DNA of 63,932 nt, counting the filler, from Octopus bimaculoides (Eukaryota): assembly GCF_001194135.2 (NCBI RefSeq). It is 4 parts of 4 records of this genome, joined end to end, with 100 filler letters (N's around TTAATTAATTAA, not from the genome) between each part and the next. Parts side by side here need not be neighbours in the genome. Positions count along the whole stretch, not along the records: positions 23,042 to 51,984 come from NC_068992.1; 3 more parts are not named here. One strand, written 5' to 3'. Shown piece by piece: positions 26,630 to 52,084 of this stretch. The translations under genes and the position numbers were made by a program. A model generated the notes under the pieces. The model did no database searches, was not told where the DNA came from, and saw nothing but the letters and a program-made list of their open reading frames with translations. The stretch's first letter is position 1. Every line of letters starts with the position of its first letter.

Positions 26630-28150
26630 AAAAATCTACAATGTCTTGTACCTTTACCGGCAATAGCCGGCTATAGTTGTAACTGGGCTTCATGTACCTT
26701 TGCATGTTGTTTAAGTCCTCCTTCCATATTACGCTCCCTTCCACATGCCTGACAGATATGATTAGTATGGTGTGTAAAACCACCATCACCAGCCTGGTTG
26801 TCAATCGTCGGTCTCGCTTTATGACTACGAAGACGACTCTTGAGTCCAGCTTTACTGAGGCAGGGTCTTGCACAGACACAGCATGTCAGCCAATCTTCTC
26901 CAATATCTGCAACATTCATTTCCTCTCGTAAAGTTCTCTTCACGCCATTACAACAAAGACAAGCAACATTCAGTCTTTTAGGCAGGGTAATACCTGCAGC
27001 CCGGAGTTTACGTTTTGTGATGAATTTCACTTTTGCACGTACTAGGTGGTGGTCAGTCCAACACAGCCCCATGAAGAACACGAACACACTGCACATCTCG
27101 TCTGTTACACACCCTAACAAGGATGTAATCCAATGTGGTCTTATATCTATTTTGTTGAAACGTGGTATTGGTAACACACAGAAGCATACCATGGCTATTA
27201 CACTTTCTCACCCCACACTTTCCAATTATAGTCTATATGTTAAAATCCCTACCCACTCTAACATTAAAATCACCCAGTACAATAACTTTGTCTGCCCTAG
27301 GGATGTTTCTTATAATGCCCTTCAAAGCATGGTAGAAAGAAACTTTTTCGTCATCAGTAGAGCACATGTCACCAAGGTCACATAATTTCCTTTAACCAAA
27401 GGAATTCCTATGGACATAAGACACTCGTTAATCCCAACTTATCCACAATAGTCGTCTTAACAGCAAATGCCACTCCAGCCTCCCCTCTGAACTCTTCATC
27501 TCTCCCGTTCCAAAAGAATGTATATTTTCTACAAGATTCTGTAAGATGACCATCTCTAGCTAATCTCGTCTCAGATAAAGCAACAATGTCAAGATCATAG
27601 CGTCAAAGCTCCTTTGCAGCAAGAGCAGTCCTTCGTTCAGGACATTCTGAGGACTCACGGTCAAGCAGCGTTTGTACATTCCAACAGCCAATATTCAATA
27701 TTTTATTTGGTTCTATCACAGTAGCATGATGACGGCCGGGTTCAGACTGTGATGCTCTGGGGCCCCTGCTGAGCTAGACTCGTTCATCTGATGTGGTTCC
27801 AGAGTCCTTACTGCCATTTATTTTGGTACATCATTGATTGTTTGCTTTTAAGGCGACAGCCAGCCATTCAGTTGAGGCACACAGCACTATCCAACAATCA
27901 TCAATTAGTAAGTTAATCAATCAATCAATGTTGCTATCATGCAATGCCTGTGCAAGAAGCTTTTTTTTTAAAGGGATGAAAGGCTGTGCAGAATCAATCC
28001 CACTCACTAAGCTACAACAGCTACAACCCGAAAAGAACAAGTCAACATCATCGGTAACCACTGAGCCGCAGGTTTTATGTCGGAGTTATTCCAGTTGCCT
28101 GAGTTGCCTTCTTCTAGAAGGATGCCCTAACAAGGGCTAGGGGTCCTTCC
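26630..28150 (-). mobile_element. Internally deleted RTE LINE: 5' UTR + APE endonuclease fused to a C-terminus with C2H2-like motifs
   Basis: Minus frames give LNIGCWNVQTLLD...PERRTALAAKEL.RYDLDIVALSETRL and WTDHHLVRAKVK (APE), then directly CCVCARPCLSKAGLKSRLRSH and CQACGRERNMEGGLKQHAKVH. No RT lies between them. Confidence 0.85.
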
Positions 28151-28304
28151 CTCCCAATGGTTTAACCGCGCAATCGGGTATTCAGTCCGATTATTTCTAT
28201 GTCGCCACGCATGATACAGCCATACGCTGGATAAAATAGATACAAAGGGGAAAAAAACATGTACGATATAAATTTTTTAAATATTGATATACAACATATA
28301 CATA

Positions 28305-28437
28305 GGCGTAGGAGTGACTGTGTGGTAAGTAGCTTGCTTATGAACCAAATGGTTCCGGGTTCAGTGTCACTGCGTGGCACCTTGGGCAAGTGTCTTCTAC
28401 TATAGCCTCGGGCCGACCAAAGCCTTGTGAGTGGACC
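28305..28437 (+). mobile_element. SINE family B head
   Basis: ggcgtaggagtgactgtgtggtaagtagcttgct...ggttccgggttcagt...ggcaccttgggcaagtgtcttc. Confidence 0.85.
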
Positions 28438-29011: not shown

Positions 29012-29675
29012 NNNNNNNNNNNNNNNNNNNNNNNNNNNNNNNNNNNNNNNNNNNNNNNNNNNNNNNNNNNNNNNNNNNNNNNNNNNNNNNNNNNNNNNNN
29101 NNNNNNNNNNNNNNNNNNNNNNNNNNNNNNNNNNNNNNNNNNNNNNNNNNNNNNNNNNNNNNNNNNNNNNNNNNNNNNNNNNNNNNNNNNNNNNNNNNNN
29201 NNNNNNNNNNNNNNNNNNNNNNNNNNNNNNNNNNNNNNNNNNNNNNNNNNNNNNNNNNNNNNNNNNNNNNNNNNNNNNNNNNNNNNNNNNNNNNNNNNNN
29301 NNNNNNNNNNNNNNNNNNNNNNNNNNNNNNNNNNNNNNNNNNNNNNNNNNNNNNNNNNNNNNNNNNNNNNNNNNNNNNNNNNNNNNNNNNNNNNNNNNNN
29401 NNNNNNNNNNNNNNNNNNNNNNNNNNNNNNNNNNNNNNNNNNNNNNNNNNNNNNNNNNNNNNNNNNNNNNNNNNNNNNNNNNNNNNNNNNNNNNNNNNNN
29501 NNNNNNNNNNNNNNNNNNNNNNNNNNNNNNNNNNNNNNNNNNNNNNNNNNNNNNNNNNNNNNNNNNNNNNNNNNNNNNNNNNNNNNNNNNNNNNNNNNNN
29601 NNNNNNNNNNNNNNNNNNNNNNNNNNNNNNNNNNNNNNNNNNNNNNNNNNNNNNNNNNNNNNNNNNNNNNNNNNN

Positions 29676-34055: not shown

Positions 34056-35610
34056 GTGCATGCTGCTGATGCAAGGGACGCAGAAACCTCACAAAAGAGT
34101 GCTATCCATCAGGCATGGAACGCTGCATCCACTTCTGCCGTGAGGTTGGCAGATGACGATAACCATTGGATGATGAGACTGCAGCCTAATGTTCACCGGA
34201 AGGCTCTTGCCCATGGCTATTGGAAGCCATCAAGTAGTCGATGGGCATCAAAGGCACTCAACTATGATCCTGCCAAGGATTACACCACTCATCGAAAGAC
34301 TGTTACGGGGAATATATCAGTAATATGTCCATTTTGCAAGGCCCTCAAGTGGTTTGGAGAATCCAGTGGCCTATGTTGCTCAAGCGGAAAAGTTCATTTG
34401 CCTGACCTGCAAAACACTCGTCAGCCTTTGCTCTCCTTACTCCTTGGTCAACACCCTGATTCACAGCAATTTACACAGAAAATTCTTATAACTGCCTTCC
34501 AAATGGCAAGTTTCGGTCACAAACCTATTCATAAAGACTCCTATATGCCGACGTTCAAAATTCAGGGCCAAACCTATCATCGGATAGGCTCTATTTTTCC
34601 TGTCAACAACACTGAACACCGATTCCTTCAAATTTACTTCATGGGAGATACCACTGAGCAAACGGCCTGTCCAGCTTAGGTGGTACCTGGGAAAAAAATG
34701 CCTTCTTTTGAATGAACTTCAGGAAATGCTCCACACCACCAACCGATATGTGAGGAACTTCATAACTGCTATACAATGCCGACATACAGATGAGCCCAAC
34801 TTCAAAGTTATGAGGAGTGACTGAATGCCTATCAGAGAGCACTAAGTATGCTTTAACTAGCCCCAAAATGATGAAATTGCAGTTCTGCTCTGCCATCCTG
34901 ATGAAGCCACACCGTCGACTACATGGCTGCCTCCTTCACCAATACATCAACATGCTTTTTCATATCAACTCTTTTAGCAGACGTGGGACGGCATAGGATG
35001 GTCCACAAGATTTTACATCCTCGTGGTGTGGACTGGGCAACATTCTGACTTTGGTCTGAATAGCTAAAAACTCGAATGCAATGCAATCATTCTCCAATTT
35101 CCATTGTGCGTTACAAGCGGACATGATCCTTTTCAAGCCTTCATGATAGCTCATTAATGACTCATTATATGCAGGGGGACAACTCTCTGCTCACGATAAG
35201 ACTAATGCTGGTTATTTTCAGCACGTATATACATGTATCCTGCTCACTTTTATGTCATTACAACTTACCAGTCTACTTTTCAATGCGACATCTTTTCACT
35301 GCGAACTGCTAAAGATTCAAAGCAGTATTCATGAACTGAAGTCAAACTCATGTCTTCATTTTTCGTTACCTGAAGTCAATTTCAGAATGGTCGTACACTG
35401 TAAGTATGTAGTAAATACATTCCTTTGACTCTACTTTTTCAAGTAGGTATTATATTGCCATTTTTGAACATACCAATCATACTTCTCCCTGAAAAAATGG
35501 CTCCCTTCGCTGTTGAATAAAATAAACTCACAGAAGNNNNNNNNNNCAATCATACTTCTCCCTGAAAAAATGGCTCCCTTCGCTGTTGAATAAAATAAAC
35601 TCACAGAAGG
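34056..35610 (+). mobile_element. Decayed Helitron Rep/helicase fragment
   Basis: ORF 34056-34679 reads ICPFCKALKWFGESSGLCCSSGKVHLP...FQMASFG...MPTFKIQGQTYHRIGS...FLQIYFMGD (Helitron N-terminal domain). Downstream sequence is frameshifted. Confidence 0.9.
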
Positions 35611-36614: not shown

Positions 36615-36620
36615 TTTATT
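36615..36620 (-). terminator. Candidate SUB1 polyadenylation signal AATAAA
   Basis: First AATAAA on the minus strand, about 95 nt after the SUB1 stop. Confidence 0.4.
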
Positions 36621-36715: not shown

Positions 36716-36795
36716 TTAGAACGCTTCAATTGCCTCATCAATGGAATCAATGTGATTTTTCAAGCATTTCCACTGCTCCAAGTTTAAACTGATTC
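36716..36795 (-). CDS. SUB1: PC4/SUB1 last coding exon
   Basis: Acceptor ttttcctttttgtag; phase-1 reading (G)ISLNLEQWKCLKNHIDSIDEAIEAF*, matching human [23 protein letters not shown]. Confidence 0.95.
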
Positions 36796-37120
36796 CTACA
36801 AAAAGGAAAATCAATGAAAATTATTGTCCCAAGGCCAGAACAACTTGTTAGTAATATTAAAGACAGTAAACAAAATAAATTTTTAACTTTGAAAATAATC
36901 GAGTTGGAAGAATTTAGTAAAACAGCTCTTTCATATAATTGTAACATGTGACAATANNNNNNNNNNNNNNNNNNNNNNNNNNNNNNNNNNNNNNNNNNNN
37001 NNNNNNNNNNNNNNNNNNNNNNNNNNNNNNNNNNNNNNNNNNNNNNNNNNNNNNNNNNNNNNNNNNNNNNNNNNNNNNNNNNNNNNNNNNNNNNNNNNNN
37101 NNNNNNNNNNNNNNNNNNNN

Positions 37121-37320
37121 CGTGGCCGTTTTCGTGCGGGTGACACGTAAAAGCACCCACTACACTCTCTGAGTAGTTGGCGTTAGGAAGGGCATCCAGC
37201 TGTAGAAACTCTGCCAAATTAGATTGGAGCCTGGTGTTGCCATCCGGTTTCACCAGTCCTCAGTCAAATCGTCCAACCCATGCTAGCATGGAAGGCGGAC
37301 GTTAAACGATGATGATGACT
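37121..37320 (+). mobile_element. RTE 3' UTR copy in a SUB1 intron
   Basis: Nearly identical to 2406-2605; ends cgttaaacgatgatgatgac. Confidence 0.9.
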
Positions 37321-37334
37321 ATGGTGTGCATGTA

Positions 37335-37485
37335 GTCATCATCTTTGTTTTACATCCATTGTTCATAGATCTGCATACCTAGAAGGTTCAGTGGGCCTCA
37401 TCTTGCTGGTGTTTTATTTTGGCTTGGTTTCTATCCCTGCATGCCCTTTCTAACATCAACCACTTCAGAGTGTACTGGTTACAAT
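37335..37485 (-). mobile_element. Diverged RTE 3' UTR copy, inverted relative to 37121-37320
   Basis: Reverse complement reads cagtacactctgaagtggttgatgttagaaagggcatgcagggatagaaaccaagccaaa...gatgatga. Confidence 0.65.
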
Positions 37486-38406: not shown

Positions 38407-38512
38407 CTTTTTTGCTAGGTCTTAATTCACCATCAGCTTCATAATATTCACGAATTCCAACCATCACTTTGCCTCGAAATTCACTGACAGTTGCATATCT
38501 CATCTTTGATAA
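38407..38512 (-). CDS. SUB1: PC4/SUB1 third coding exon (ssDNA-binding domain)
   Basis: cttttag acceptor and G|gtatag donor. Reads [36 protein letters not shown], matching human [37 protein letters not shown]. Confidence 0.95.
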
Positions 38513-38655: not shown

Positions 38656-38751
38656 CTGGAACATGTTTTCATCTCCATCACCAGAAGATTTGGCTTTCTT
38701 TTCAGGCTTTTTTTCAGGTTTCTTTTCTGGCTTCTTTTTCTTGCTTACCGG
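38656..38751 (-). CDS. SUB1: PC4/SUB1 second coding exon (Lys-rich)
   Basis: tttatttgtag acceptor and CAG|gtgtgt donor; 96 nt, reading PVSKKKKPEKKPEKKPEKKAKSSGDGDENMFQ (human ...DDNMFQ). Confidence 0.95.
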
Positions 38752-40220
38752 CTACAAATAAACNNNNNNNNNNACAAAACTCAAACAGAAAAAAAAAAAT
38801 GTACACAGACCATTCTTGTAAAGAACAAGCTTTTCAGAACACCTTGTAAACAATCTGTCATTGTTTAGTCCCAGGTCAGCCCTAATCACATCATCTTTTC
38901 TTCAGGCACAGCATAAACAGGGCAATATCATCTAATGCATTAAGACATGGGCAAGATTTAATATTTAACCCCCACCTAAATGTGGATGTTCTATTAGAAC
39001 TTTATTATGGTAGTTACGATGAGAGAAACACCCACACTGGCTTTTTGGTGCAAAATACACTATATTGCTAGCAGGGAGATAAATCTCTGCTACCTCTAGT
39101 GCCAACATCACCAGATTGTGTGATTTCGACCTTGTTTGGTCTTATCAATGATGGACACTTGATAGTAAGATCTCATTGAGACCTGGCTGCTACTTTAACA
39201 GCTACATAGGGACATTTTCTTGTAGGGCTCATTGCAACATGCTACTAAATATAAAAACTCCTGGCCTTTCTAAGTGTACTGAACAAATAAAGGCCTCCAA
39301 CAAAACTCTACGTGGTTGCTCTACCTGACAGGAATTGCAGCCAATCCCTTCTCAAATCTTAACCCTTAAGCATTCAGATTATGTTGTCAAATGTAATGTT
39401 TATTTATTCATGTTGTATTGAATTAATCATGCATTATTTCATAGCTTCAAGTTTTCAATTATAGTTATTTTTTGAATGACATTGTAGGGTTGGTATGTGT
39501 TAGAAGCCAGATCTGTCTGGTTTGAACAGAAAACAGGAAGAATATTTTGGCTGCTTCAAATGCTACATTATTAATAAAAGGACAAGACACAAAAAATCTG
39601 CCTCAATAACTTCCGTCCAACCCATGCATGCATGGAACAGTGGACATGAAAATGACAATGTTCACAGCCTTCAACCAACCAAATTCTATTCACATGGTAT
39701 CAGTCAACCCCAAGCTACAGAACAAGACATTTGCTCAAGATGCTGCACAGTGAGATCAAACCCAGAACCTCTGTTTCTGAGAAAGAGTTTAATCAGTTAT
39801 GTTTGTATCTATAAACATGAAATTATATATGTAAATATACAAAATATCTTAAGTGAATATGTTTCACTGGATGTGTAACAGTGTAGTCTGCATAAACAAC
39901 AGAACACAGAGTGTCTCAAGAAAAAAAAAATGGTTTTAGAGCTATATCAGTTTTGTCATGCAAGAGTGTGATGGTATGACTAGCAAACCAGGAAAATGGA
40001 ATAAGCCTGCAGAAGAGGAAGAATGAAGACCTGGGATCAAACTTCACAAGAATTAGTGAAGTTTGATCATAAGATGCTGGACATCATTATGATGATTAAG
40101 AAATAAGTCAAGTGATGAAATAATCTGCCAACTTATAACAACATAGAAAAGAAGACATCAAAATAGTGATACACATTACGCACACATATATATAGAGAGA
40201 GAGGGATAAAGCTATCTTAC

Positions 40221-40283
40221 CGTTCTATCATCAGGACCACTATCACTGTCACTGGAGTCTGAAAGAGTCTTGTGCTTTGGCAT
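40221..40283 (-). CDS. SUB1: PC4/SUB1 first coding exon (the exon spans 40221-40294 with 11 nt of UTR)
   Basis: tttgcag acceptor, ATG at 40283, MPKHKTLSDSSDSDSGPDDRT, donor ACG|gtaaga. The four exons join in phase to give 114 aa; a non-coding exon must lie upstream. Confidence 0.95.
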
Positions 40284-41376
40284 ATTTTCTAAATCTGCAA
40301 ATGATGAAAGAGAAAGAATTACAACCAGTTTTACAATTCATTTTCCCTTGAAAATAAAACAAGTTTCCTTTTTATATTTATAAATGGATGATGATAAAAC
40401 AACCAAAAGACACCTGAACATCGATAACAAAGCTGTTCATTGTATACTGAGCCAAAGATTAAAAAAACTGATTTTAACTGACGATGCTGGTATCAGAAAT
40501 ATTCTTTTGCAGATATCTTCTGCTGCTGCGGGTTTCAGTCATTGTAGTGTGGTCATGTTGGAGCACCAAGTCCAATGGTGAGGGTTGCTAATATCAATTA
40601 TCTCAGTACTAATTTTATTCATCTCCACTTACTGAATGACTTTTAGCTCTTGGCCAGAAGGGATACAATATGGTGCATTTTTTTTTTTTTTGCACTGCTA
40701 CACACCAACATACAAGTAAATGATGCTTCTTCACAGCTTCTGTCTACCAAACTTCATATGGTACCTCACAATACCTTCAACTCTGGTTAAAACTAACACA
40801 CTGGTACAGCGTGATTGAAACCAGCAAGTTAATTCACACATACATCAACACATATGAAAGTGTCTTTATAGATAATACTGGTGTTGCTAATAAAGTACTC
40901 CTATTTGGTTTTGTTATAAAAATTATCAAAATACAATTTTAGTGTAAAACTTGTGTATATGGCTAGTAATCCCAAGCATAAATGTATTAAAAAAAAAAGC
41001 AATTATCTGAAAAGCCTCAGTATACAAATGGGTGGAGTTTATGTTTTAAACTGAAGCAAGTTACTGTCTAAGAAATAATCAGTTACAGTGTGGTACAGAA
41101 AAAATGCAAAAGGATGAAAAAAGAGAAATACAAATATGGAAATTAAGCCACAAATACCATATTTACTGGTAAACAAGATGCATCCCTATTGTACACTTAT
41201 TTGGGGGGGGGGGGATTTAGTACGTTTCATAATACATTTATTGAAATTACTTTAACCCTTTAGCATTCAGATTACTCTTTCAAATGCAATATTTTCTTTC
41301 TTTCTTTGTTTTGAATTAATCATGCATTATATCTCATAGCTTTTGAGATTTTGATGATGTGAATGTTTGTCATGCA

Positions 41377-41500
41377 GGTGACACGTAAAAAGCGCCCACT
41401 ACACTCTCGGAGTGGTTGGCGTTAGGAAGGGCATCCAGCTGTAGAAACCAAGCTGAATCAGACTGGATCCTGGTGCAGCCTCCTGGCTTGCCAATACTAA
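41377..41500 (+). mobile_element. RTE 3' UTR fragment
   Basis: ggtgacacgtaaaaagcgcccactacactctcggagtggttggcgttaggaagggcatccagctgtagaaac. Confidence 0.85.
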
Positions 41501-41534
41501 ATTTCTTAAATTTTCACTTTATTTAAAAAAAATT

Positions 41535-42122
41535 TTTTGGCGAAATACGTAGAAAAATACGGAGACTAGGATTCTGAAATAAAAAAATTCTGTAAAATTT
41601 CGATTTTTCAAAAACAAAAAGAATAAAATAAACCCCCGTCCCCTCCGCCCTATGACAAGAAGTGAAATTAAAGTGTTTTCTCTACTAATGATTCATGACG
41701 AACGTAATCCAATATGTTGTGGTTGAGGGTCTTTTGGAATTAAGCGAGGTATATAAACATTAGTTTTATACACACAAACAAAATGACATTAAAAAATTTT
41801 TTTTCTCTTTCGGTAATTCGTGTTTACAAAGTTGATCCTCGGTTTGGCTGTTGTTTCTAGCTTGTCAGATTTTCCGTTGGGGCGGATTTAAATTTTGAAA
41901 TTTTTTCTTCTTTGCTAACTAGTTTTAAAATTTTGAAAACGCGTTTCTAGCATGTCAGGTTTTCTGTTTAGATACTTTTTGCGTCTGCTGTTTTATAATT
42001 CTATGCAGGCGTGAAACATTTTAATTTCATTTCTTGTTATAGAGCGGAGGGGTTTAATTTTTTGGAAAATTTGAAATTTTACAAAAAATTTTTTTTTCCA
42101 GAATCATAACCTCCGTATTTCG
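41535..42122. repeat. Long imperfect inverted repeat (MITE-like)
   Basis: aaatacggagactaggattctg...cccctccgccctatgacaagaagtgaaattaaa (41535-41675) mirrors tttaatttcatttcttgttatagagcggagggg...cagaatcataacctccgtattt (42010-42122). Confidence 0.65.
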
Positions 42123-43199
42123 CTTTAAAAATCTTTTTTAAAAAGTGAAAATTTAATAGGGAGGGGGGCTTAAATTTTGAAATGCAGATTCGGAATCTCA
42201 GCCCTCGATATAATGTGTTCATGCAAAAAATAAAACCCAAAAAAAATCTGAAAGGGGGTGCGATCCATGATCTTTACCTCCGCCAAGAGATATTACCGGT
42301 CTCTGGAACATTGGGGGCGAAAAAAACCCAAAAAAAACTGCCGGTACGCCACATCAGATAGTTTGAGAAGCACTACGTTAAACGATTATGATGATGACAC
42401 ACGTAGAAAAAGATTTGAAAAAAATTCGATCGTTGTCATTATAGAGTTATGTCCCTTATAGTTACCCTAATCACAAAACCACATATTTTAGTGGTCTATT
42501 TACCTCAGTAATTAACTCCTAATTATATCAATCGTAAACAAACTACAATACTTTTTAATAGTACTACGTAATATTATACACAGAATAATACTACGGTATT
42601 ATATATATATATATATACAATAATATAGCATTTATTGCATACAAAACACCACATTTTAGGGATATACCTCACAGTTAACTACTAATCATTATATCCCTTC
42701 TACTATAGGTACAAGACCTGAAATTTTGGGGAAGATGGTTAATCGTTTAAACCAGCTCCATCCGAAAGGATGAAAGGTTAACAAATATCACAACGTAATC
42801 TTCCCAACACTACCGATTTTGGCAAAAATAATAATTTAATAAAAACAATAAACGATCCACGTTTCGAAAATAAAATTATGAGGCAAAGCTATCTGTCTTC
42901 AACAATTTTAAACTTCCTTAAGAAACAATAATTGTATAAGATGCTAAATGTTTTTCTCCTTAGAAACTCCGTGTTTGTATTTAGATTTACTTCCGCCTGT
43001 TACTTCTATGAAATATATAAATGGCAATTGCTGTAATGCTAGTTATAAAAATAAATTAATAGGAACAAATTGTAAGAAAACATTCTATAATTTTATCCCA
43101 CTCTAATAATGTAATAGTAAGTTACGGTTAATATCTAGATCCACACCCCTAGATATTAACCAGTGTCCAGTAATGACAAAGTGAAATTTATTTTAAAAT

Positions 43200-43425
43200 G
43201 AAACAAAGAAATTAAGCTTCGATAGTAAAATGCGTAAAAGACAGCATCGCCTTTAAACACTGATGTGCATACATTTTAAAAGTAAAACACGAAATCGAGT
43301 ACGTCTTTCGTCCTTTCGGGGTTGATTAAATAAGTACCGGTCGAGGACGGGTCGATGTAATCGATTAGCCCACTCCTCCAAAATTGCAGACTTTGTGCCT
43401 ACTGTAGAAAGGATTTTAAAATATC
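43200..43425 (+). mobile_element. SINE family D
   Basis: cgtctttcgtcctttcggggttgattaaataagtaccggtcgaggacgggtcgatgtaatcgatta; an opposite-strand copy lies at 54355-54490. Confidence 0.65.
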
Positions 43426-46074
43426 CCACAGCCTTCAGTCACACCAAACGTTCCCAGCATACTAACGTGATAATTTAATAATTTTCGAAGTAAAGAATTC
43501 ATTATATATCTGGAAGAAAATACTCAATAGCCATCCATTCGATGCTGATGATTTCGCCGTGCCATACTTCAGACAAGACAAAATAAACATACACTTCGCA
43601 TTTAAGCTCTTCCCCCCATCTCACCCCGACAGCATATTACAAACAAAAATGAAACCTCGTTCATTTCGAACGTCAGAAATAATACGAAGAAACCAAGCAT
43701 TTGCAAAAAAAACCCTGGAGGTACTTTTAAGCAGAAATAAAATTTATCAGCACGATTAATTAATGAATGGTGGAGTCCACAGAAGTAGTCATTCGGGCTG
43801 TAAGGGGTTGAAATACATAACGACAGAGTTGTTTAGTGTTTTTCTATATTTTATTAATTGCATAATTCAAATAAACACGCTTTAACTATGAAGACTAGAA
43901 CTAGCTGGTCCTATGACAAAAAATTTAAGTAGATAATGCTTATGAAAGGATAAGAGAGGGGAGAATAAGTGATCGACAGATTTTCTTTTACCGCCAAAAT
44001 AAGTGCTTGGTGCCGCCACATTCCAAACAGAAACAGTAGAATCTTTTTTTATAATCGTTAATCTTACAACATTGAAAGCGTCAATCCGCCTACATAAGTT
44101 ACAAATAAAATTCACGTAATAATTCCGTTAAAATAATCACGAGTGATGGAATTAAATATACGAAAGAAAGAAAAACAAGCCCAGGTAATGGGCGATTTTT
44201 AAAAAATACATATTTAGTATTTTCAAAATGAATTCTCCAGTCTTATGCTAAATACATATTTTCCACTTATCACTTATGTTTCTTCTGGTGGTGTTAACTA
44301 GATGTGCAAAAGCAGCAGCAACACACAGAGAGAAGAATATTAATTAAGTCTGTGTTGGATTTATTTCATCCTCTATTGAAACAATTAGAGGACTAAAAAA
44401 TTAAATTAAAATCTATTTAAAAAAAAAAATTCTCAATTTAAATAATTATAAACATTAAAAGACGTACATTAACTTCAAAAAAATTAGTCTTGTTAATATT
44501 TTTATGGTGGTTTATGGAGATAAATATATTTAAAGTGTTAATTGATTCAAGAGGAAGATGTATGTTACTTACATTGTAACTTCAGCAAAAGGTGAAACTG
44601 ACACTGCACATGCGCACATTTATTATATATTCGCTTATGTCCCCTTGTCTTAACGCAGTCATGGGCTGATTGCGGCCCGCTTCTAGAAAAAGGTTGCCCG
44701 TGAATAAAAGCAAATTCTTCTAATTTGTTTTTATAAATTGACAGAATCAGAGATTTGTAATGAAAGACGTTCCATCTATGACAATTCCGCCTTTTACTCA
44801 TTGTTGTGATAGTTGCTCAACTTGATTTTTCAGACATTCCAGTTGTTATAATTTGTCTTTTAGTTATCGTTCACCAAATATTCCAATAATTACCATTCCG
44901 TCTTTTAGTTACTGTATGATAATAGATTAGACGGTAAAACTTTAGATTCATGCCCCACCGTCTCAGTTTCTTCATAACTTTCTAAAAAGTCCATATTTCT
45001 TTATAAAATTTTCTACAGATATGTTTCAGATAGTGCTAAATTGCTAAATTACGGTTATAACAGAACTTGTGAACTTTTTTTTTTTTTTCGTAGAAAAAGG
45101 GGTTTCAGATAATTCCTATACCACGACTGTGTTTCCTCATAACTTTCTGAAAAATAGATATTTTGAAATAAAACTTTGTACTATTGCGCTTCAAGTGATA
45201 AAGGTTATGATTACGTCGGAATTTAATGTGTAAANNNNNNNNNNNNNNNNNNNNNNNNNNNNNNNNNNNNNNNNNNNNNNNNNNNNNNNNNNNNNNNNNN
45301 NNNNNNNNNNNNNNNNNNNNNNNNNNNNNNNNNNNNNNNNNNNNNNNNNNNNNNNNNNNNNNNNNNNNNNNNNNNNNNNNNNNNNNNNNNNNNNNNNNNN
45401 NNNNNNNNNNNNNNNNNNNNNNNNNNNNNNNNNNNNNNNNNNNNNNNNNNNNNNNNNNNNNNNNNNNNNNNNNNNNNNNNNNNNNNNNNNNNNNNNNNNN
45501 NNNNNNNNNNNNNNNNNNNNNNNNNNNNNNNNNNNNNNNNNNNNNNNNNNNNNNNNNNNNNNNNNNNNNNNNNNNNNNNNNNNNNNNNNNNNNNNNNNNN
45601 NNNNNNNNNNNNNNNNNNNNNNNNNNNNNNNNNNNNNNNNNNNNNNNNNNNNNNNNNNNNNNNNNNNNNNNNNNNNNNNNNNNNNNNNNNNNNNNNNNNN
45701 NNNNNNNNNNNNNNNNNNNNNNNNNNNNNNNNNNNNNNNNNNNNNNNNNNNNNNNNNNNNNNNNNNNNNNNNNNNNNNNNNNNNNNNNNNNNNNNNNNNN
45801 NNNNNNNNNNNNNNNNNNNNNNNNNNNNNNNNNNNNNNNNNNNNNNNNNNNNNNNNNNNNNNNNNNNNNNNNNNNNNNNNNNNNNNNNNNNNNNNNNNNN
45901 NNNNNNNNNNNNNNNNNNNNNNNNNNNNNNNNNNNNNNNNNNNNNNNNNNNNNNNNNNNNNNNNNNNNNNNNNNNNNNNNNNNNNNNNNNNNNNNNNNNN
46001 NNNNNNNNNNNNNNNNNNNNNNNNNNNNNNNNNNNNNNNNNNNNNNNNNNNNNNNNNNNNNNNNNNNNNNNNNN

Positions 46075-46600
46075 GAAATATTATGCCTGGTCTTGTGCTA
46101 AAAATGCATGCAAACCACTCTCTGAAAAAGCTCTTTGAACCCAAATCAGAGATAAATTTTCAGAGTGATACACAAATAAAGGATTTAAATTTATATCAGA
46201 AAGGCATCAACACTGGCAGATTCACCTGTCATTTTTTATTTTGGGCTAATTCAAGAATTTCTTAAACCTTTCAAACTATCTTTTTACTAGCAGAAAACGT
46301 TTTTTTTTTCCTCTCCAAGTCTGATCCTCAATTCAAGCACCCAAGAGCTGCCTCTTTTCAAGTATCATAATAGATCTATGGAAAAAAAAAAAAAGATCCA
46401 AGCAATTAATGGAGTAATTTCTTCAGTATTTGACTTAATTTTTTGTCATGCGTTGTTCTCATTAACTGTGTTGAGCTTTTGTTTAGGCAATGTGGGAGAT
46501 CTTTGTCTCTCCTGCATTAAGCTCTTTTAAAACATCAAGTTTAATATCCAGTGTAATCTCTTTACAGTTCGTTTTCATACTACCTACCTTAAGTTCTACT
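46075..46600 (-). mobile_element. Decayed Tigger/pogo transposase N-terminal fragment
   Basis: Minus frames give KEITLDIKLDVLKELNAGE (CENP-B-type HTH), IEDQ, and ERFKKF...KMTGESASVDA (the GE-x-ASAD motif). Confidence 0.75.
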
Positions 46601-47491
46601 TGACAGTTTCCTTTCAGACAGCTTCAATTGTAGAGAAATCCAACAGTGGTGGCGATCAACAGTCATCCATGACAAATTATGTATTAAACAAAAACAGTAG
46701 TACCAGGGAAAGCAAAAAATTGCTATCTTATTTCAATGAAAGTAAGAATGGATATGAGAAGGTGAAAGGGGAGAAAGAATAATTTGGGAGGAAGTTCTGT
46801 ATGATTACTGTTAGTTGAAAGGTTAACAAGGTCATAGGTGCTTAGCCCATTGCACCTCTGACTTGAACTACAAAAAAGAACTCTACACACTAAGCATGGG
46901 CAACCATTTCCAAGAAGTGGGTTACATCGAATGTAGATCATCAAGCTGGCTGAACAACTAAAACAGAAGGAAATTCAATGTAATGTTATTCAGTTAAGTT
47001 CTGCCAACAGAGTTTACCCATGACTGTTACATATACACAATAAACAGCAACATCGCCTAAATTTATACTACACTTTAACAAATTCTGAACGATGATACTA
47101 TCATACCCAACCCTGAAGCATTTAATCAGTCACAGTGACTGATTAGATGCTGTTTTAAACCTTATTTTACCATGCAAAATAAGTTTTTAATCCATTAGTG
47201 CTTAAACCCAAATATTTTAACTGTTTTATGCTCAAAATAGCCAGGTCAGAACTCTCATACCCAACTTAAATATCATTCTAAAAATGACAATCACACCATA
47301 GAAATCTCAAAGCTACAAGATAATACAGGATTAAAATGAAAGTAAAAAATAATTATAAATTAAAAAAATACAAAAACTAAGTCACTTGACTTTAATGTTC
47401 TTTATTTTTCCTGTTTTAAAATGATATGGTTATGACCATGTTGGAGCAGAACAGCCATCTTTGAGGGCTTTATGTTGTTCGTTTTACTCAG

Positions 47492-47673
47492 TATTCCGGT
47501 TGAAACCGTGCCTCTCCCTTTGATATTGAGAAAGAAGTGTGTCTTTCGATTGCTATCTCAATGAATGAATTAAATAAATAAATAGATGCTGACGGGGGAG
47601 TACTAATCCTGCTTCTCTTGGTTGGACAATTAATCCACTGTAGCGTTCTCCAGGGGCAACAGGGTCCAATACA
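47492..47673 (+). other. Candidate non-coding exon (possible 5' UTR exon of UBIAD1)
   Basis: Acceptor gttgttcgttttactcag and donor ACA|gtaagt flank 182 nt of unique sequence with stops in all three frames. Confidence 0.25.
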
Positions 47674-48354
47674 GTAAGTTAAAAAAATATATAGAAAATT
47701 TAACCTGAAAAATAAATGAAAGAAAATAAGTAAGGCAGTACACACAAGAGGCAACCACTAGGTGGTCATTCAAACTTCGAGAAATAACAGCCAGAAACCC
47801 TCAAATCGCAGAATATCGACTTTACAAATGGACATATATACTGATAATGCAATAGGTAGCATCATTTTTCTGAAAGGCCAATGTCTTTTTTTAATCCTGC
47901 CAATGGCCAACTTGTTTATTTTATGCTTGAATATTTTTGCATTGTTTCTCTCTCTCTCTCTCTGTCTCACACAAACGCATGGCAGTCCTACACGTGTGCA
48001 CATCCACTGACTCATAAGATCGAGAAAAGTGGATGTTTTTTAATGAAATTTTCTACAAATATGCTTCAGATAGTGCAGATTCCAATTATATAGGAATATG
48101 TGGTGAACAAAAACGAGAGTGTAGGGAGGAGTTTCGGAAAATTTCTTTTTTTATTCTTAGTGAACTGCGTACGGGTGTACTTGTCCAAATTTACCTCTTA
48201 AATGGAATTAAAGTTGGGAAAATTAGAGTAATTTTAGCCAATCAACAGACAGCGAGGTATTAACATCTTGTTACCATGACACCCGCATGTTGTATTGTGC
48301 TGATTCTTCAAACCATAACATTTACTTCACCTGCGTATTTTGTTTTAATAAAAA

Positions 48355-48518
48355 TTTATGCCCCCCCCCCTCCCAACATCGCTTGACAACCGATGCCGGT
48401 GTGTTTACATCCCTGTAACTTAGCGGTTCGGCAAAAGTAACTGATAGAATAAGTACTAGTCTTACAAAGAATAAGTCCAGGGGTCGATTTGCTCGACTAA
48501 AGGCAGTACTCCAGCATG
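48355..48518 (+). mobile_element. SINE family B 3' half
   Basis: caacatcgcttgacaaccgatgccggtgtgtttacatccctgtaacttagcggttcggc...gctcgactaaaggcagtactccagcatgg. Confidence 0.85.
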
Positions 48519-48644
48519 GGTTTTAGGGTTAGGGGGATGAGTATTTTTGCCAAATTTGGTGAAAAATTTGTGGCGGTGTATTGAACAGATTTTCACCAAA
48601 TTCGGCAAAAATACTCATAACCCGAACCCTCTAAAGCTAAAACC
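48519..48644. repeat. Foldback element of about 125 bp with TTAGGG-like ends
   Basis: atgagtatttttgccaaatttggtgaaaa pairs with ttttcaccaaattcggcaaaaatactcat; the termini are ggttttag / ctaaaacc. Confidence 0.8.
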
Positions 48645-49919
48645 AGTACAAACGCACGAACGATGTCATAAATAACAGTACTGACGATAGTTGTTGACAA
48701 ACAACGGCAGTAATTTTATTNNNNNNNNNNNNNNNNNNNNNNNNNNNNNNNNNNNNNNNNNNNNNNNNNNNNNNNNNNNNNNNNNNNNNNNNNNNNNNNN
48801 NNNNNNNNNNNNNNNNNNNNNNNNNNNNNNNNNNNNNNNNNNNNNNNNNNNNNNNNNNNNNNNNNNNNNNNNNNNNNNNNNNNNNNNNNNNNNNNNNNNN
48901 NNNNNNNNNNNNNNNNNNNNNNNNNNNNNNNNNNNNNNNNNNNNNNNNNNNNNNNNNNNNNNNNNNNNNNNNNNNNNNNNNNNNNNNNNNNNNNNNNNNN
49001 NNNNNNNNNNNNNNNNNNNNNNNNNNNNNNNNNNNNNNNNNNNNNNNNNNNNNNNNNNNNNNNNNNNNNNNNNNNNNNNNNNNNNNNNNNNNNNNNNNNN
49101 NNNNNNNNNNNNNNNNNNNNNNNNNNNNNNNNNNNNNNNNNNNNNNNNNNNNNNNNNNNNNNNNNNNNNNNNNNNNNNNNNNNNNNNNNNNNNNNNNNNN
49201 NNNNNNNNNNNNGTAAATATAAACAACTGAATACTTGTCAGTGATTGGTTGAAATTATCGAAATAAGACAATTTTTTACATGAAATAAATTCGAATACAA
49301 AAATATTTTTCTGTTCTATAACACAAAATAGATAAGTATACGAAGTTTGAAAGTCTTTCGGTACCAAAAATACTACGTAAAACATTAATGAAAAATGTGG
49401 CCCCCGTTTTAAAAAAGATCCAGTGTTTCGTTAGAAAACAAACGGTGTCCGCCAAATCTCCCTCAAATGAGACCCTGCAGTCTTAAATAGAGAAAAGGAA
49501 TCGTTGGACAGTCCATGATATATAAAAGGCGAAAGAGTTACGGATGGTACACTAACCTTATTGCCAAGCAAAGTACAACAGCAGAGTTACAAATTGACCA
49601 ATATCAGACATGTCTTGTTATTGTTATTTAGCACAGCTCAAATATGATCAGTCATCTAAAAAGCTTTCCAGTCTTTTGTACAGACATTGTATATGTGTAT
49701 TTAAATAACCATGTTATCCAGTGTATTTTCGGATATCAGCTGAAGACGGTAGGGTGGAATTAAAAGATTTGGCTGCTATTTCTAGCTAGTCGAGCAACTG
49801 CGTATGGGCGCCTTTGTTGGCTCGTTTTCTGATTTATTTCATGATTAAAGAAGCCATATGCAACTAATTTGTTATCAACGCTTCCATACAGAAACTGTAA
49901 GACTTCACATTCCACTGAA

Positions 49920-50005
49920 ACACGTGTGGGGGGAGAGAGAGAGAGAGGAGGTGGGTGGGTGAATTGATCTGCGCATGCAGATTTGATATATTCAAATCTG
50001 AATGT
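49920..50005. promoter_or_regulatory. Candidate promoter motifs upstream of UBIAD1
   Basis: E-box cacgtg, a GA-repeat, an NRF1-like near-palindrome atctgcgcatgcagat, and the hairpin cagatttga-tatat-tcaaatctg, about 450-520 bp upstream of the ATG. Confidence 0.3.
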
Positions 50006-50441
50006 CTGAGTATGTGTGTGAAGCCAATAAAATTAAGACACGAACTGGATTTTATTTAGCAGAGAAAAAAAAATACTGAACTTCAAGGTTGAACAGTTTT
50101 CTTAAGAATTTACGTTTTCCTGATCTACTATTTATAAACCCTGCATATCTTCCTGCCAAAACTTCTTTTATAATTGCTTAATACCACCATTTGGCCTATC
50201 TAAAATACCCGCGGCATTTATCTAACATACAGTTTTTGGTTTTTAAAAAAAGATAGCTAAAATAGAAAAGACTATACTTTAATACATTACTGTCGCTGCC
50301 AAAACGAAAACAACTTTTTTATAAGAACACATTTCAAAAAATACCTTGAGAGAATTATATACGAATACTTTATTAACAAAATCACACACGTTGCTGTAAT
50401 TCAAGCGCGAGAACTACTAGAGCATTTCCATTTGGAGAATT

Positions 50442-51323
50442 ATGGCGATTTTGAAAGAGCTTTTGCTGTCAGTCCGACCTTGGTCTTTTTCGGCATCTAT
50501 CGTCCCTAGTATTATTGGGATAATCCTAGTGAGAACTAACCCCGACCACAATCCGACTATGTGCCTTATTTGTAGTACATTATTCACTGTACTTTTAATT
50601 CATGCTGCTGGTAACCTGAACAACACCTTCTGCGATTTCATAAATGGGGTCGATCAGAAAGATTCCACACACGACCCGACCCTGACCGATGCCAAACTGA
50701 CCAAAGACCAGCTGTTATTATTGCGAAATGTTTGCTATATCGCTTCTCTCTTTTCACTCACTTTCACCGTTGTCTATTCCCCGGCTTCACATCTATCCTT
50801 GATTGTTCTGTACAGTCTGGGAGTTGTTAGCAGTTTGATCTACACCGGTTGGATAGCCCTCAAATACAGGGCACTAGGCGATTTCCTGATCTTCTTAACT
50901 TTTGGACCTTTAGTAACAGAGTTTTCTTACCTAAGCTGCAGCGGTTTCTTGTCCGGAAGGGCAGCAGTCCTAGTGCTGCCCATGGCAACCAATGCGGTCG
51001 CTATACTCCACGCTAACAACATGAGGGACGAAGTAGCCGATAGGAAAGCAGGAATTCTCACTCTACCCATGGTACTTGGAAAGCACATTTCTCGTCAGCT
51101 GATGATAGTGCTGCTCTTTTCGTCTTACATATTTCTTCTACTCATAATCGCTTTCACATGTAACCTGCTCTTTGTTTTGCCCGCATTAACTGCATTTGCT
51201 CTGGTTCCGCTTTACAAACGCGTACAGGAATTTGACATGATCGGACTTCCCGAGACACTGGCCAAACTTAATTTAGTACAAGGTTTGCTCTACTGTTTCA
51301 CGCTTCTTTTCTCAAATATTTAA
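50442..51323 (+). CDS. UBIAD1: UbiA prenyltransferase domain-containing protein 1-like (heixuedian/MenA family), 293 aa, single coding exon
   Basis: Intact multi-TM ORF with RPWSFSAS, HAAGNLNNTFCDF..G.D, LKYRALGD..IFLTFGPL, AILHANNMRDEVADRKAGILTL and LPETLAKLNL, all collinear with UBIAD1. Confidence 0.93.
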   Translation: MAILKELLLSVRPWSFSASIVPSIIGIILVRTNPDHNPTMCLICSTLFTVLLIHAAGNLNNTFCDFINGVDQKDSTHDPTLTDAKLTKDQLLLLRNVCYIASLFSLTFTVVYSPASHLSLIVLYSLGVVSSLIYTGWIALKYRALGDFLIFLTFGPLVTEFSYLSCSGFLSGRAAVLVLPMATNAVAILHANNMRDEVADRKAGILTLPMVLGKHISRQLMIVLLFSSYIFLLLIIAFTCNLLFVLPALTAFALVPLYKRVQEFDMIGLPETLAKLNLVQGLLYCFTLLFSNI

Positions 51324-52084
51324 ACAATTTAACTTAGGAAACCGAAATCATATCAGAGAAGCCTACCTTTATGTTGACTAAAAGCAAAACAAAAATGAAT
51401 AATAGTTAAGAGAAAAAAAAAAAAGCTCAACTTCATCCGATAATCGTTAAGTGTCCAGAAAAAAAGTCACTATTTTAGCAAGGAAAACTTAAAATACCTC
51501 GCATTGTATTGTGGCATTACAAGCATATTCAATATTTGGCGATCTTTTTAATGTTGATGACTAAAAAGAATATTCCAGCCTATATCACGAAGAAGTCAGT
51601 TTTTCCAGGTTCATAGCTAACAATTTGCCTTATTTAACAAATCAAAGACATTAACCATATAAAACACACCTTAAAATATTGTCCGCTTTAAACACAAACG
51701 GAGCTAAAACCGTCAATTACAAAAGAGTGAGCTTAGGTAATGTTTCATGTTCACTGCACATTGACACAAGTAAAAAAGGGGGGGGGGGAATCCAAAATTC
51801 ACCCGACAATATGCTAAAAGTACTTAGGACTTTATAAAACACATACAAACCTACAAGGCAAGTGTTTCTTAACGTCATTTCCTGCATTTTCTCCCATCCA
51901 GACTACACACACAAGAAAAGGCTGTTTTGTATACAATTTATTGCATGATATTAGCAGCTTTATTATAATTTAACATTAAAAAAANNNNNNNNNNNNNNNN
52001 NNNNNNNNNNNNNNNNNNNNNNNNNNNNTTAATTAATTAANNNNNNNNNNNNNNNNNNNNNNNNNNNNNNNNNNNNNNNNNNNN

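What the first reader, a model, noticed from the sequence alone, without database searches (positions are those of the whole stretch)
38414..38416. PC4 Ser codon that one A-to-I edit would convert to the conserved Gly
Seen: exon 3 ends CCT AGC AAA AAA G, giving P-S-K-K-G-ISL; the A (38416, minus strand) is in a U-A-G context. Established: human PC4 has PGRKGISL and this Gly is, to my knowledge, broadly conserved; UAG is the preferred ADAR triplet; coleoids recode extensively. Inference: AGC>GGC editing could restore or tune the ssDNA-binding domain of a general transcription coactivator.
Basis: partly seen in the sequence, partly recalled or inferred. Interest (0 to 1): 0.7.

Follow-up and report, generated by a model that had tools for sequence, protein, structure and literature searches.

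The report
Octopus PC4 gene: serine at conserved glycine
The octopus gene for the transcription cofactor PC4 really does carry a serine codon where most animals have glycine, but serine is the normal residue there in nematodes and nothing in the sequence points to RNA editing, so this is most likely an ordinary substitution.

Summary
The window is Octopus bimaculoides (GCA_001194135.2, chromosome CM046612.1). It holds an intact four-exon PC4/SUB1 gene of 114 aa on the minus strand. Coding exon 3 ends CCT AGC AAA AAA G. Ser86 (38416-38414) aligns with human Gly99, a residue that contacts ssDNA.

The glycine is common at this position but not invariant:
- In 469 PC4 domain instances the column reads G 411, T 36, S 19.
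- Among 158 single-domain proteins of at most 200 aa it reads G 148, S 7, T 2, C 1.
- Nematode orthologues carry serine natively. Cooperia and Teladorsagia have the identical [10 protein letters not shown].
- 35% of orthologues deviate at one or more of the 17 columns that are at least 90% conserved.

A cephalopod-like relative has GGC, so one G-to-A transition explains the codon. The U-A-G context is weak evidence. The 3' G is forced by any GGN-to-AGN change, and the 5' U is a synonymous proline position.

I found no double-stranded RNA around the site. The fold z-score is -0.13, the only local pairing is a 7-bp hairpin, and no complementary partner beats shuffled controls. The published base rate is 2.26% of potential restorative sites edited in this species, mostly at low level.

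Editing could not be tested because no octopus RNA or read data were reachable. Most likely this is a tolerated germline substitution; an SNP or assembly error is the next most likely. Interest is low.

The parts
40221..40283 (-). PC4 coding exon 1: ATG at 40283, MPKHKTLSDSSDSDSGPDDRT, the Ser/Asp-rich acidic N-terminus. The donor is GTAAGA at 40220.
   Evidence: tblastn with mollusc orthologues; sequence; spliced translation
38656..38751 (-). PC4 coding exon 2: the Lys-rich region PVSKKKKPEKKPEKKPEKKAKSSGDGDENMFQ. The acceptor lies 12 nt from a 10-N assembly gap at 38764-38773.
38407..38512 (-). PC4 coding exon 3: [35 protein letters not shown] + G (phase 1). This is the core of the ssDNA-binding domain.
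   Evidence: Pfam PF02229 covers residues 52-103 with E = 1.4e-23
38414..38416 (-). Ser86 codon AGC, aligned with human Gly99. The A at 38416 is flanked by U (38417) and G (38415). This base is CM046612.1:7,473,572.
   Evidence: The relative L001 has GGC at the same codon.
38414..38437 (-). The only predicted local pairing of the site: a 7-bp hairpin with a 2-nt bulge (GCUG..GGU/ACC.UAGC), in which A38416 pairs with U38435. It is far shorter than a typical ADAR substrate.
   Evidence: Pairing probability is 0.06-0.57 in pre-mRNA windows and 0.97 in the mature mRNA
36716..36795 (-). PC4 coding exon 4: (G)ISLNLEQWKCLKNHIDSIDEAIEAF plus the TAA stop.
36615..36620 (-). AATAAA, a likely polyadenylation signal about 95 nt after the stop codon.
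   Evidence: read directly from the sequence
44573..44801 (-). Upstream ORF exon that, spliced in phase 1 to the acceptor before 40294, reproduces the 194-aa length of the annotated gene model. It is probably a spurious N-terminal extension.
   Evidence: The annotated gene ends at 44801 with a 194-aa product. The sequence has a GTAAGT donor at 44572. There is no Pfam hit. The reconstruction was not confirmed by exact look-up.

Best explanation
This is the intact, single-domain PC4/SUB1 orthologue of Octopus bimaculoides. On the lineage leading to this octopus, one G-to-A transition changed the ancestral GGC (Gly) to AGC (Ser) at the position equivalent to human Gly99. That residue lies on the ssDNA-binding face, next to the basic pair K87-K88 (human R100-K101). 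The serine is a germline-encoded, tolerated variant, and the protein works as a serine protein without needing RNA editing. What is shown: the gene model, the codon, the Gly state in relatives, and the natural occurrence of Ser and Thr at this column. What is inferred: that the substitution is fixed rather than polymorphic, and that it is functionally near-neutral.
For: The gene is intact, with canonical splice sites and a 114-aa product. It hits PF02229 at E = 1.4e-23 and human PC4 in the PDB at E = 4.6e-20. Every other column that is at least 90% conserved is kept, and S86 is the only deviation. The cephalopod-like contig L001 has CCA GGC AGA where the octopus has CCT AGC AAA, so one transition accounts for the Ser. 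Serine recurs naturally at this column. The census is G 411, T 36, S 19 over 469 domains, and G 148, S 7, T 2, C 1 in single-domain proteins. Five nematode orthologues carry Ser, and two of them have the identical [10 protein letters not shown]. Pomacea has Thr. One deviation at a conserved column is seen in 21% of orthologues. There is no dsRNA at the site.
Against: Gly is still the state in about 94% of single-domain PC4 proteins and in every other mollusc sampled except Pomacea. The human residue contacts DNA (PMC4350104), so the change may not be neutral. I could not see any other Octopus species at this codon: the O. sinensis locus L009 stops about 6 kb short. I could not see reads either, so fixation is unproven. 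Coleoids do edit thousands of such sites.
Confidence: 0.7

Rival explanations
1. Heterozygous SNP or base error in the reference individual or assembly. The species' usual allele is GGC (Gly), and the AGC is a rare, possibly mildly deleterious allele or a miscall.
For: This is the single deviation in an otherwise fully conserved domain. The assembly around it is fragmented by N gaps, including a 10-N gap 350 nt away. No independent sequence of this exon from the same genus was found.
Against: Substitution errors are rare in short-read consensus sequence, and the flanking bases read cleanly. The same Ser is a normal state in other phyla, so no error is needed to explain it.
Confidence: 0.18
2. 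Restorative A-to-I editing. ADAR deaminates A38416 in a useful fraction of transcripts, so part of the protein pool regains Gly. This would be either harm-permitting in the sense of Jiang and Zhang 2019, or tuned by tissue or temperature.
For: The organism is a coleoid. The site meets the published definition of a potential restorative site, because A-to-G gives the ancestral amino acid. U-A-G is the favoured neighbour context. Restorative sites are edited more often than synonymous ones in this species: 2.26% against 1.41%.
Against: The base rate is only 2.26% for any detectable editing, with median levels of a few percent. About 90% of restorative sites lie below a 20% editing level; that row is for O. 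vulgaris. No duplex was found. The 321-nt pre-mRNA fold has z = -0.13. The pairing probability of the site is unstable, at 0.06-0.57. The best long-range partner in 3.8 kb of pre-mRNA (-26.0 kcal/mol) is no better than shuffled queries (-27.8 +/- 2.7). No inverted repeat covers the site. The triplet context is largely forced by the codon change. TCP4, SUB1 and PC4 are absent from the editing tables held as text, but those files are truncated, so this is a weak negative. Ser works natively in nematodes, so there is no need for repair.
Confidence: 0.07
3. The serine is a gained regulatory site. R-P-S-K-K resembles a basophilic kinase motif, and phosphorylation on the DNA-binding face would switch off ssDNA binding.
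For: This rests only on the sequence: a basic residue at -2 and at +1/+2, and the same motif kept in strongylid nematodes. PC4 is known to be regulated by phosphorylation, though at its N-terminus; that is my own knowledge, not a tool result.
Against: No test was made and no phosphoproteomic data are available. Thr and Ser at this column occur in many different flanking contexts, which fits simple tolerance better.
Confidence: 0.03

Closest known systems
Human PC4 / SUB1 (PDB 1PCF, 2C62, 6YCS) and fungal Sub1 (MoSub1, PDB 4AGH)
   Same: The architecture is the same: an acidic Ser-rich N-terminus, a Lys-rich stretch, and a C-terminal four-strand-plus-helix ssDNA-binding domain. The DNA-contact residues R58, F65, R74, Y77, P85, K87 and K88 match human R70, F77, R86, W89, P98, R100 and K101.
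   Different: Ser86 replaces human Gly99. Tyr stands at the W89 position, as in MoSub1 and most molluscs. Lys replaces R100.
Nematode PC4 orthologues (Cooperia oncophora, Teladorsagia circumcincta, Caenorhabditis remanei, C. tropicalis, C. nigoni)
   Same: They carry Ser at exactly this column. Cooperia and Teladorsagia have the identical decapeptide [10 protein letters not shown].
   Different: These are distant lineages, so the Ser arose independently. The other molluscs and the two cephalopod-like sequences have Gly.
Potential restorative A-to-I editing sites of coleoids (Jiang and Zhang 2019, PMC6881472)
   Same: It is a genomic A in a coleoid coding sequence whose change to G would give the ancestral amino acid. 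That is exactly the paper's definition of a potential site.
   Different: Only 2.26% of such sites are actually edited in this species. Editing here is untested, and no dsRNA supports it.

Membership tests
PC4/Sub1 transcriptional coactivator family (Pfam PF02229) | A match to the PC4 domain profile above Pfam's gathering score | tested here: met
   82.6 bits against a cut-off of 25, E = 1.4e-23, residues 52-103 covering the whole 52-position profile
PC4/Sub1 transcriptional coactivator family (Pfam PF02229) | Conserved ssDNA-contact residues (human R70, F77, R86, W/Y89, R/K100, K101) | tested here: met
   R58, F65, R74, Y77, K87 and K88 are present in the alignment to 1PCF/6YCS. The contact residues are as listed in PMC4350104. 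Only the G99 equivalent differs (Ser86).
PC4/Sub1 transcriptional coactivator family (Pfam PF02229) | A fold of four beta-strands followed by a helix | tested here: met
   The AlphaFold2 model has strands 29-34, 37-44, 47-58 and 61-72, then helices 73-81 and 83-92 (93-aa numbering). Block-mean pLDDT is 94-98 over the domain. This is a prediction, not a solved structure.
PC4/Sub1 transcriptional coactivator family (Pfam PF02229) | ssDNA binding and coactivator activity | not testable with these tools
   This needs biochemistry.
ADAR A-to-I recoding site | A in genomic DNA but G (inosine) in a fraction of cDNA reads from the same animal | not testable with these tools
   No reads or Octopus transcripts were reachable. 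Exact look-ups of the S and G forms were both absent, and the DNA pattern scans were empty.
ADAR A-to-I recoding site | Favoured neighbours: 5' U or A (not G), and 3' G | tested here: met
   The context is U-A-G, and the preference is as described in PMC9989829. It is one of 3 such triplets among 132 A's of the CDS, but the 3' G is forced by the GGC-to-AGC change.
ADAR A-to-I recoding site | The site is embedded in a stable double-stranded RNA | tested here: not met
   The fold z-score is -0.13. There is only a 7-bp hairpin, and the pairing probability is unstable. No complementary partner beats shuffled controls, and no inverted repeat lies over the site. Caveat: N gaps hide part of the introns, and structure prediction is imperfect.
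Restorative editing site (Jiang and Zhang 2019) | The post-editing amino acid equals an ancestral state | tested here: met
   Gly is found in L001 (GGC), in P0009 and in nearly all molluscs.
Restorative editing site (Jiang and Zhang 2019) | The site is actually edited in the focal species | not testable with these tools
   The base rate is 0.0226 in this species. The gene is not found in the truncated source tables.

The most novel reading that the evidence does not exclude
A38416 is edited at a high and regulated level, dependent on tissue or temperature. Octopus cells would then make both Ser86 and Gly86 forms of a general transcription and DNA-repair cofactor, differing in ssDNA affinity. 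That would be a restorative recoding event on the DNA-binding surface of a core nuclear factor rather than in a neuronal channel or motor protein.
Probability: 0.02. Interest if true: 0.45.

Novelty: already known. Interest (0 to 1): 0.12.

Why it matters
If the site were edited, it would add one more entry to the roughly 2,000 restorative sites already catalogued in this species, this time in a general transcription cofactor. It would be a convenient case for testing the harm-permitting view against the adaptive view of coleoid editing, because the Ser and Gly proteins are small and easy to assay. As it stands, this is a routine lineage-specific substitution in a well-known gene. Its main use is cautionary. 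A Gly-to-Ser(AGY) change always produces an 'editable' A followed by G, so this pattern alone is not evidence of editing.

Tried and rejected
**Transcript-derived PC4 from Octopus**
- Two homologue searches returned no Octopus-genus protein.
- Exact look-ups of the 114-aa, 39-aa exon-ORF and 194-aa forms, each with S or G, were all absent.

**The O. sinensis orthologous codon**
- I fetched the O. sinensis locus through the neighbouring UBIAD1 gene (L009).
- It aligns only to window 44422-51984 and stops about 6 kb short of exon 3.

**DNA pattern scans and literature**
- Two scans of metagenome contigs for the exon, one exact with R at the site and one degenerate, found nothing.
- The supplements held as text of Shoshan 2021, Jiang and Zhang 2019 and Zhang 2023 contain no TCP4, SUB1 or PC4 entry, but the files are truncated.
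- Liscovitch-Brauer 2017 and Birk 2023 are not held.

**Pseudogene or diverged paralogue**
- I considered this and rejected it.
- The reading frame and splice sites are intact, and all other conserved columns are kept.

**An intronic editing-complementary sequence**
- I considered this as well.
- None was found.

Full report
**1. What is in the sequence**

The minus strand of 38512-38407 is an exon flanked by ttttag and gtatag. It translates to [35 protein letters not shown] plus the first base of a Gly codon. A tblastn with human PC4 and with mollusc orthologues found the other coding exons. Reading the sequence fixed their borders:
- coding exon 1: 40283-40221
- coding exon 2: 38751-38656
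- coding exon 3: 38512-38407
- coding exon 4: 36795-36716, including the stop

Spliced together they give 345 nt and 114 aa: [114 protein letters not shown].

The protein hits Pfam PC4 (PF02229) at 82.6 bits, E = 1.4e-23. It hits human PC4 chains in the PDB at E = 4.6e-20 to 2.5e-18. An AlphaFold2 model shows the expected four strands and a helix, with block-mean pLDDT of 94-98 in the domain.

**2. Whose genome this is**

The intronless UbiA-family ORF at 50442-51323 is an exact product of GCA_001194135.2, chromosome CM046612.1. Its 90%-identity cluster contains the Octopus sinensis UBIAD1 homologue XP_029643673.1. The locus fetched from that assembly is base-for-base identical to window 40442-51984. 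The window is therefore Octopus bimaculoides, a coleoid, and the site is CM046612.1:7,473,572.

**3. How conserved the glycine is**

In 56 mostly molluscan homologues the column is at least 90% Gly. I then took the 150 best representatives from a search of 1.84 billion proteins, added all earlier hits, and extracted every PC4 domain with a profile.
- Over 469 residues at this column the census is G 411, T 36, S 19, and V, K, C one each.
- In single-domain proteins of at most 200 aa it is G 148, S 7, T 2, C 1.

The serines are not noise. Five named nematode orthologues have Ser. Cooperia and Teladorsagia have [10 protein letters not shown], the same ten residues as the octopus. Three Caenorhabditis species have PSRKG or PSKKG. 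The snail Pomacea has Thr.

Human Gly99 does matter structurally. Together with W89, R100 and K101 it contacts nucleotide dT5 in the PC4-ssDNA complexes (PMC4350104).

**4. Is the deviation unusual?**

Among 133 single-domain orthologues, 17 columns are at least 90% conserved. Of these orthologues, 46 (35%) deviate at one or more of the columns and 28 (21%) deviate at exactly one. The octopus protein deviates only at this column. One such deviation is ordinary.

**5. The ancestral state**

Logan contigs L001-L008 carry exons 1-3 of a PC4 gene. They were found through a read-through ORF, P0055, and came from eight sequencing runs. The N-terminus of that gene (MPKTKDLSDSDSDSGPEDR) resembles the octopus protein and the Tara Oceans transcript P0009 more than it resembles other molluscs.

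I infer that they come from another cephalopod, but the species could not be named. They are not from the genus Octopus, because their introns do not align to the window. O. sinensis non-coding DNA, by contrast, aligns at 84-90%.

Their exon 3 is 88.9% identical at the nucleotide level. It reads CCA GGC AGA AAA G where the octopus reads CCT AGC AAA AAA G. One G-to-A transition therefore made the serine. By the definition of Jiang and Zhang, this is a potential restorative editing site.

**6. Evidence bearing on editing**

(a) Neighbour context. A 5' U or A and a 3' G are favoured across metazoans, in a study whose text names O. bimaculoides (PMC9989829). U-A-G occurs at 3 of the 132 A's in this CDS. 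However, any GGN-to-AGN change has G as its 3' neighbour by construction. The 5' U is a synonymous third position of proline (CCA in L001). The triplet therefore adds little.

(b) Double-stranded RNA.
- The 321-nt pre-mRNA around the site folds no better than shuffles (z = -0.13).
- The site's pairing probability swings between 0.06 and 0.57 with window size.
- The only recurring partner is U38435, in a 7-bp bulged hairpin.
- The best duplex between a 51-nt window on the site and 3.8 kb of pre-mRNA is -26.0 kcal/mol. Shuffled queries give -27.8 +/- 2.7.
- No inverted repeat covers the site.
- N gaps hide some intron sequence, so this is not an absolute negative.

(c) Base rate.
- In O. bimaculoides, 2.26% of potential restorative sites are edited at any detectable level, against 1.41% of synonymous sites (source data of PMC6881472).
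- Per-tissue frequencies are below 1%, and median levels in neural tissues are mostly 2-4%, up to 8.1% in the optic lobe.
- In O. vulgaris about 90% of restorative sites are below a 20% editing level.

(d) Direct look-ups. The gene is not in the editing tables held as text, but those files are truncated. The two key papers with full tables are not held.

**7. Direct evidence that could not be obtained**

No Octopus-genus PC4 protein, transcript or exon ORF exists in the searchable collections, in either the Ser or the Gly form. The O. sinensis locus reachable through the neighbouring gene stops about 6 kb short of exon 3. I therefore cannot say whether the Ser is shared within the genus, whether it is heterozygous in the reference animal, or whether the RNA differs from the DNA.

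**8. Verdict**

The premises are largely right. The editing inference is untested and has a low prior. My estimates are:
- tolerated germline Gly-to-Ser substitution in an otherwise strongly conserved, functional PC4 gene, of the kind nematodes carry: about 0.7
- SNP or assembly error: about 0.18
- detectable restorative editing: about 0.07 (this can coexist with a fixed substitution)
- editing at a level that matters functionally: about 0.01-0.02

Both the kind of gene and the kind of site are already known, so interest is low.

Noticed in passing
window 44573-44801 (-) and 40284-40294: The assembly's annotated gene here ends at 44801 and has a 194-aa product with no Pfam hit on record. Splicing the ORF that starts at ATG 44801 (donor GTAAGT at 44572, phase 1) to the acceptor just upstream of the PC4 ATG gives 76 + Y + LEN + 114 = exactly 194 aa. 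The annotated model is probably PC4 with a spurious 80-aa N-terminal extension. The true start is likely ATG 40283, because the named mollusc orthologues begin MPKSKE. The exact look-up of my reconstruction failed, so this is unconfirmed.
   Followed up: partly
window 50442-51323 (+); L010 19374-20318 (-): There is an intronless UBIAD1-like gene (293 aa, PF01040) 10 kb upstream of PC4. A second UbiA-family gene (314 aa) lies on the opposite strand about 8.5 kb further on, outside the piece. This looks like a local duplication. The O. sinensis orthologue is 291 aa and falls in the same 90%-identity cluster.
   Followed up: partly
window 28300-28435, 37141-37318, 41379-41493, 48365-48519: Copies of a dispersed repeat of about 120-180 bp, probably SINE-like, also occur several times in the O. 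sinensis locus L009. One copy lies in PC4 intron 3, beside a 50-nt imperfect inverted repeat (37172-37221 / 37415-37464, 76% complementary). That repeat could form intronic dsRNA, but it is about 1 kb from the site.
   Followed up: no
window 38764-38773; 29012-29675; 36957-37120; 45235-46074; 48721-49212: Assembly gaps (runs of N) interrupt the locus. A 10-N gap sits 12 nt upstream of the exon-2 acceptor, and a 164-N gap lies in intron 3. At least the 29012-29675 gap is flanked by a TA dinucleotide repeat, and TA/CA microsatellites occur elsewhere in the piece.
   Followed up: no
window 34056-34679 (+) and 26671-27192 (-): Two long ORFs (207 aa and 173 aa, the latter with Cys/His-rich motifs) have no Pfam hit. 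They look like transposon remnants rather than host genes.
   Followed up: partly
proteins P0124-P0155: The strongest matches to a mollusc PC4 in the 1.84-billion-protein library are proteins of about 300-500 aa with three to four tandem PC4 domains, from unnamed organisms. In these and the other multi-domain or long proteins, Thr or Ser replaces the Gly in 46 of 311 domains.
   Followed up: partly
collections: No Octopus-genus PC4 protein appears in the collection of 5.8 billion clusters, although the neighbouring O. sinensis UBIAD1 protein is present. PC4 may be unannotated or mis-modelled in the octopus annotations.
   Followed up: partly
window 38411-38413 (codon 87, AAA): The next codon is Lys, where human, Gigantopelta, L001 and P0009 have Arg (AGA). 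An A-to-G change at its second base would also 'restore' Arg. However, most molluscs have Lys here, which shows how easily such restorable sites arise.
   Followed up: partly
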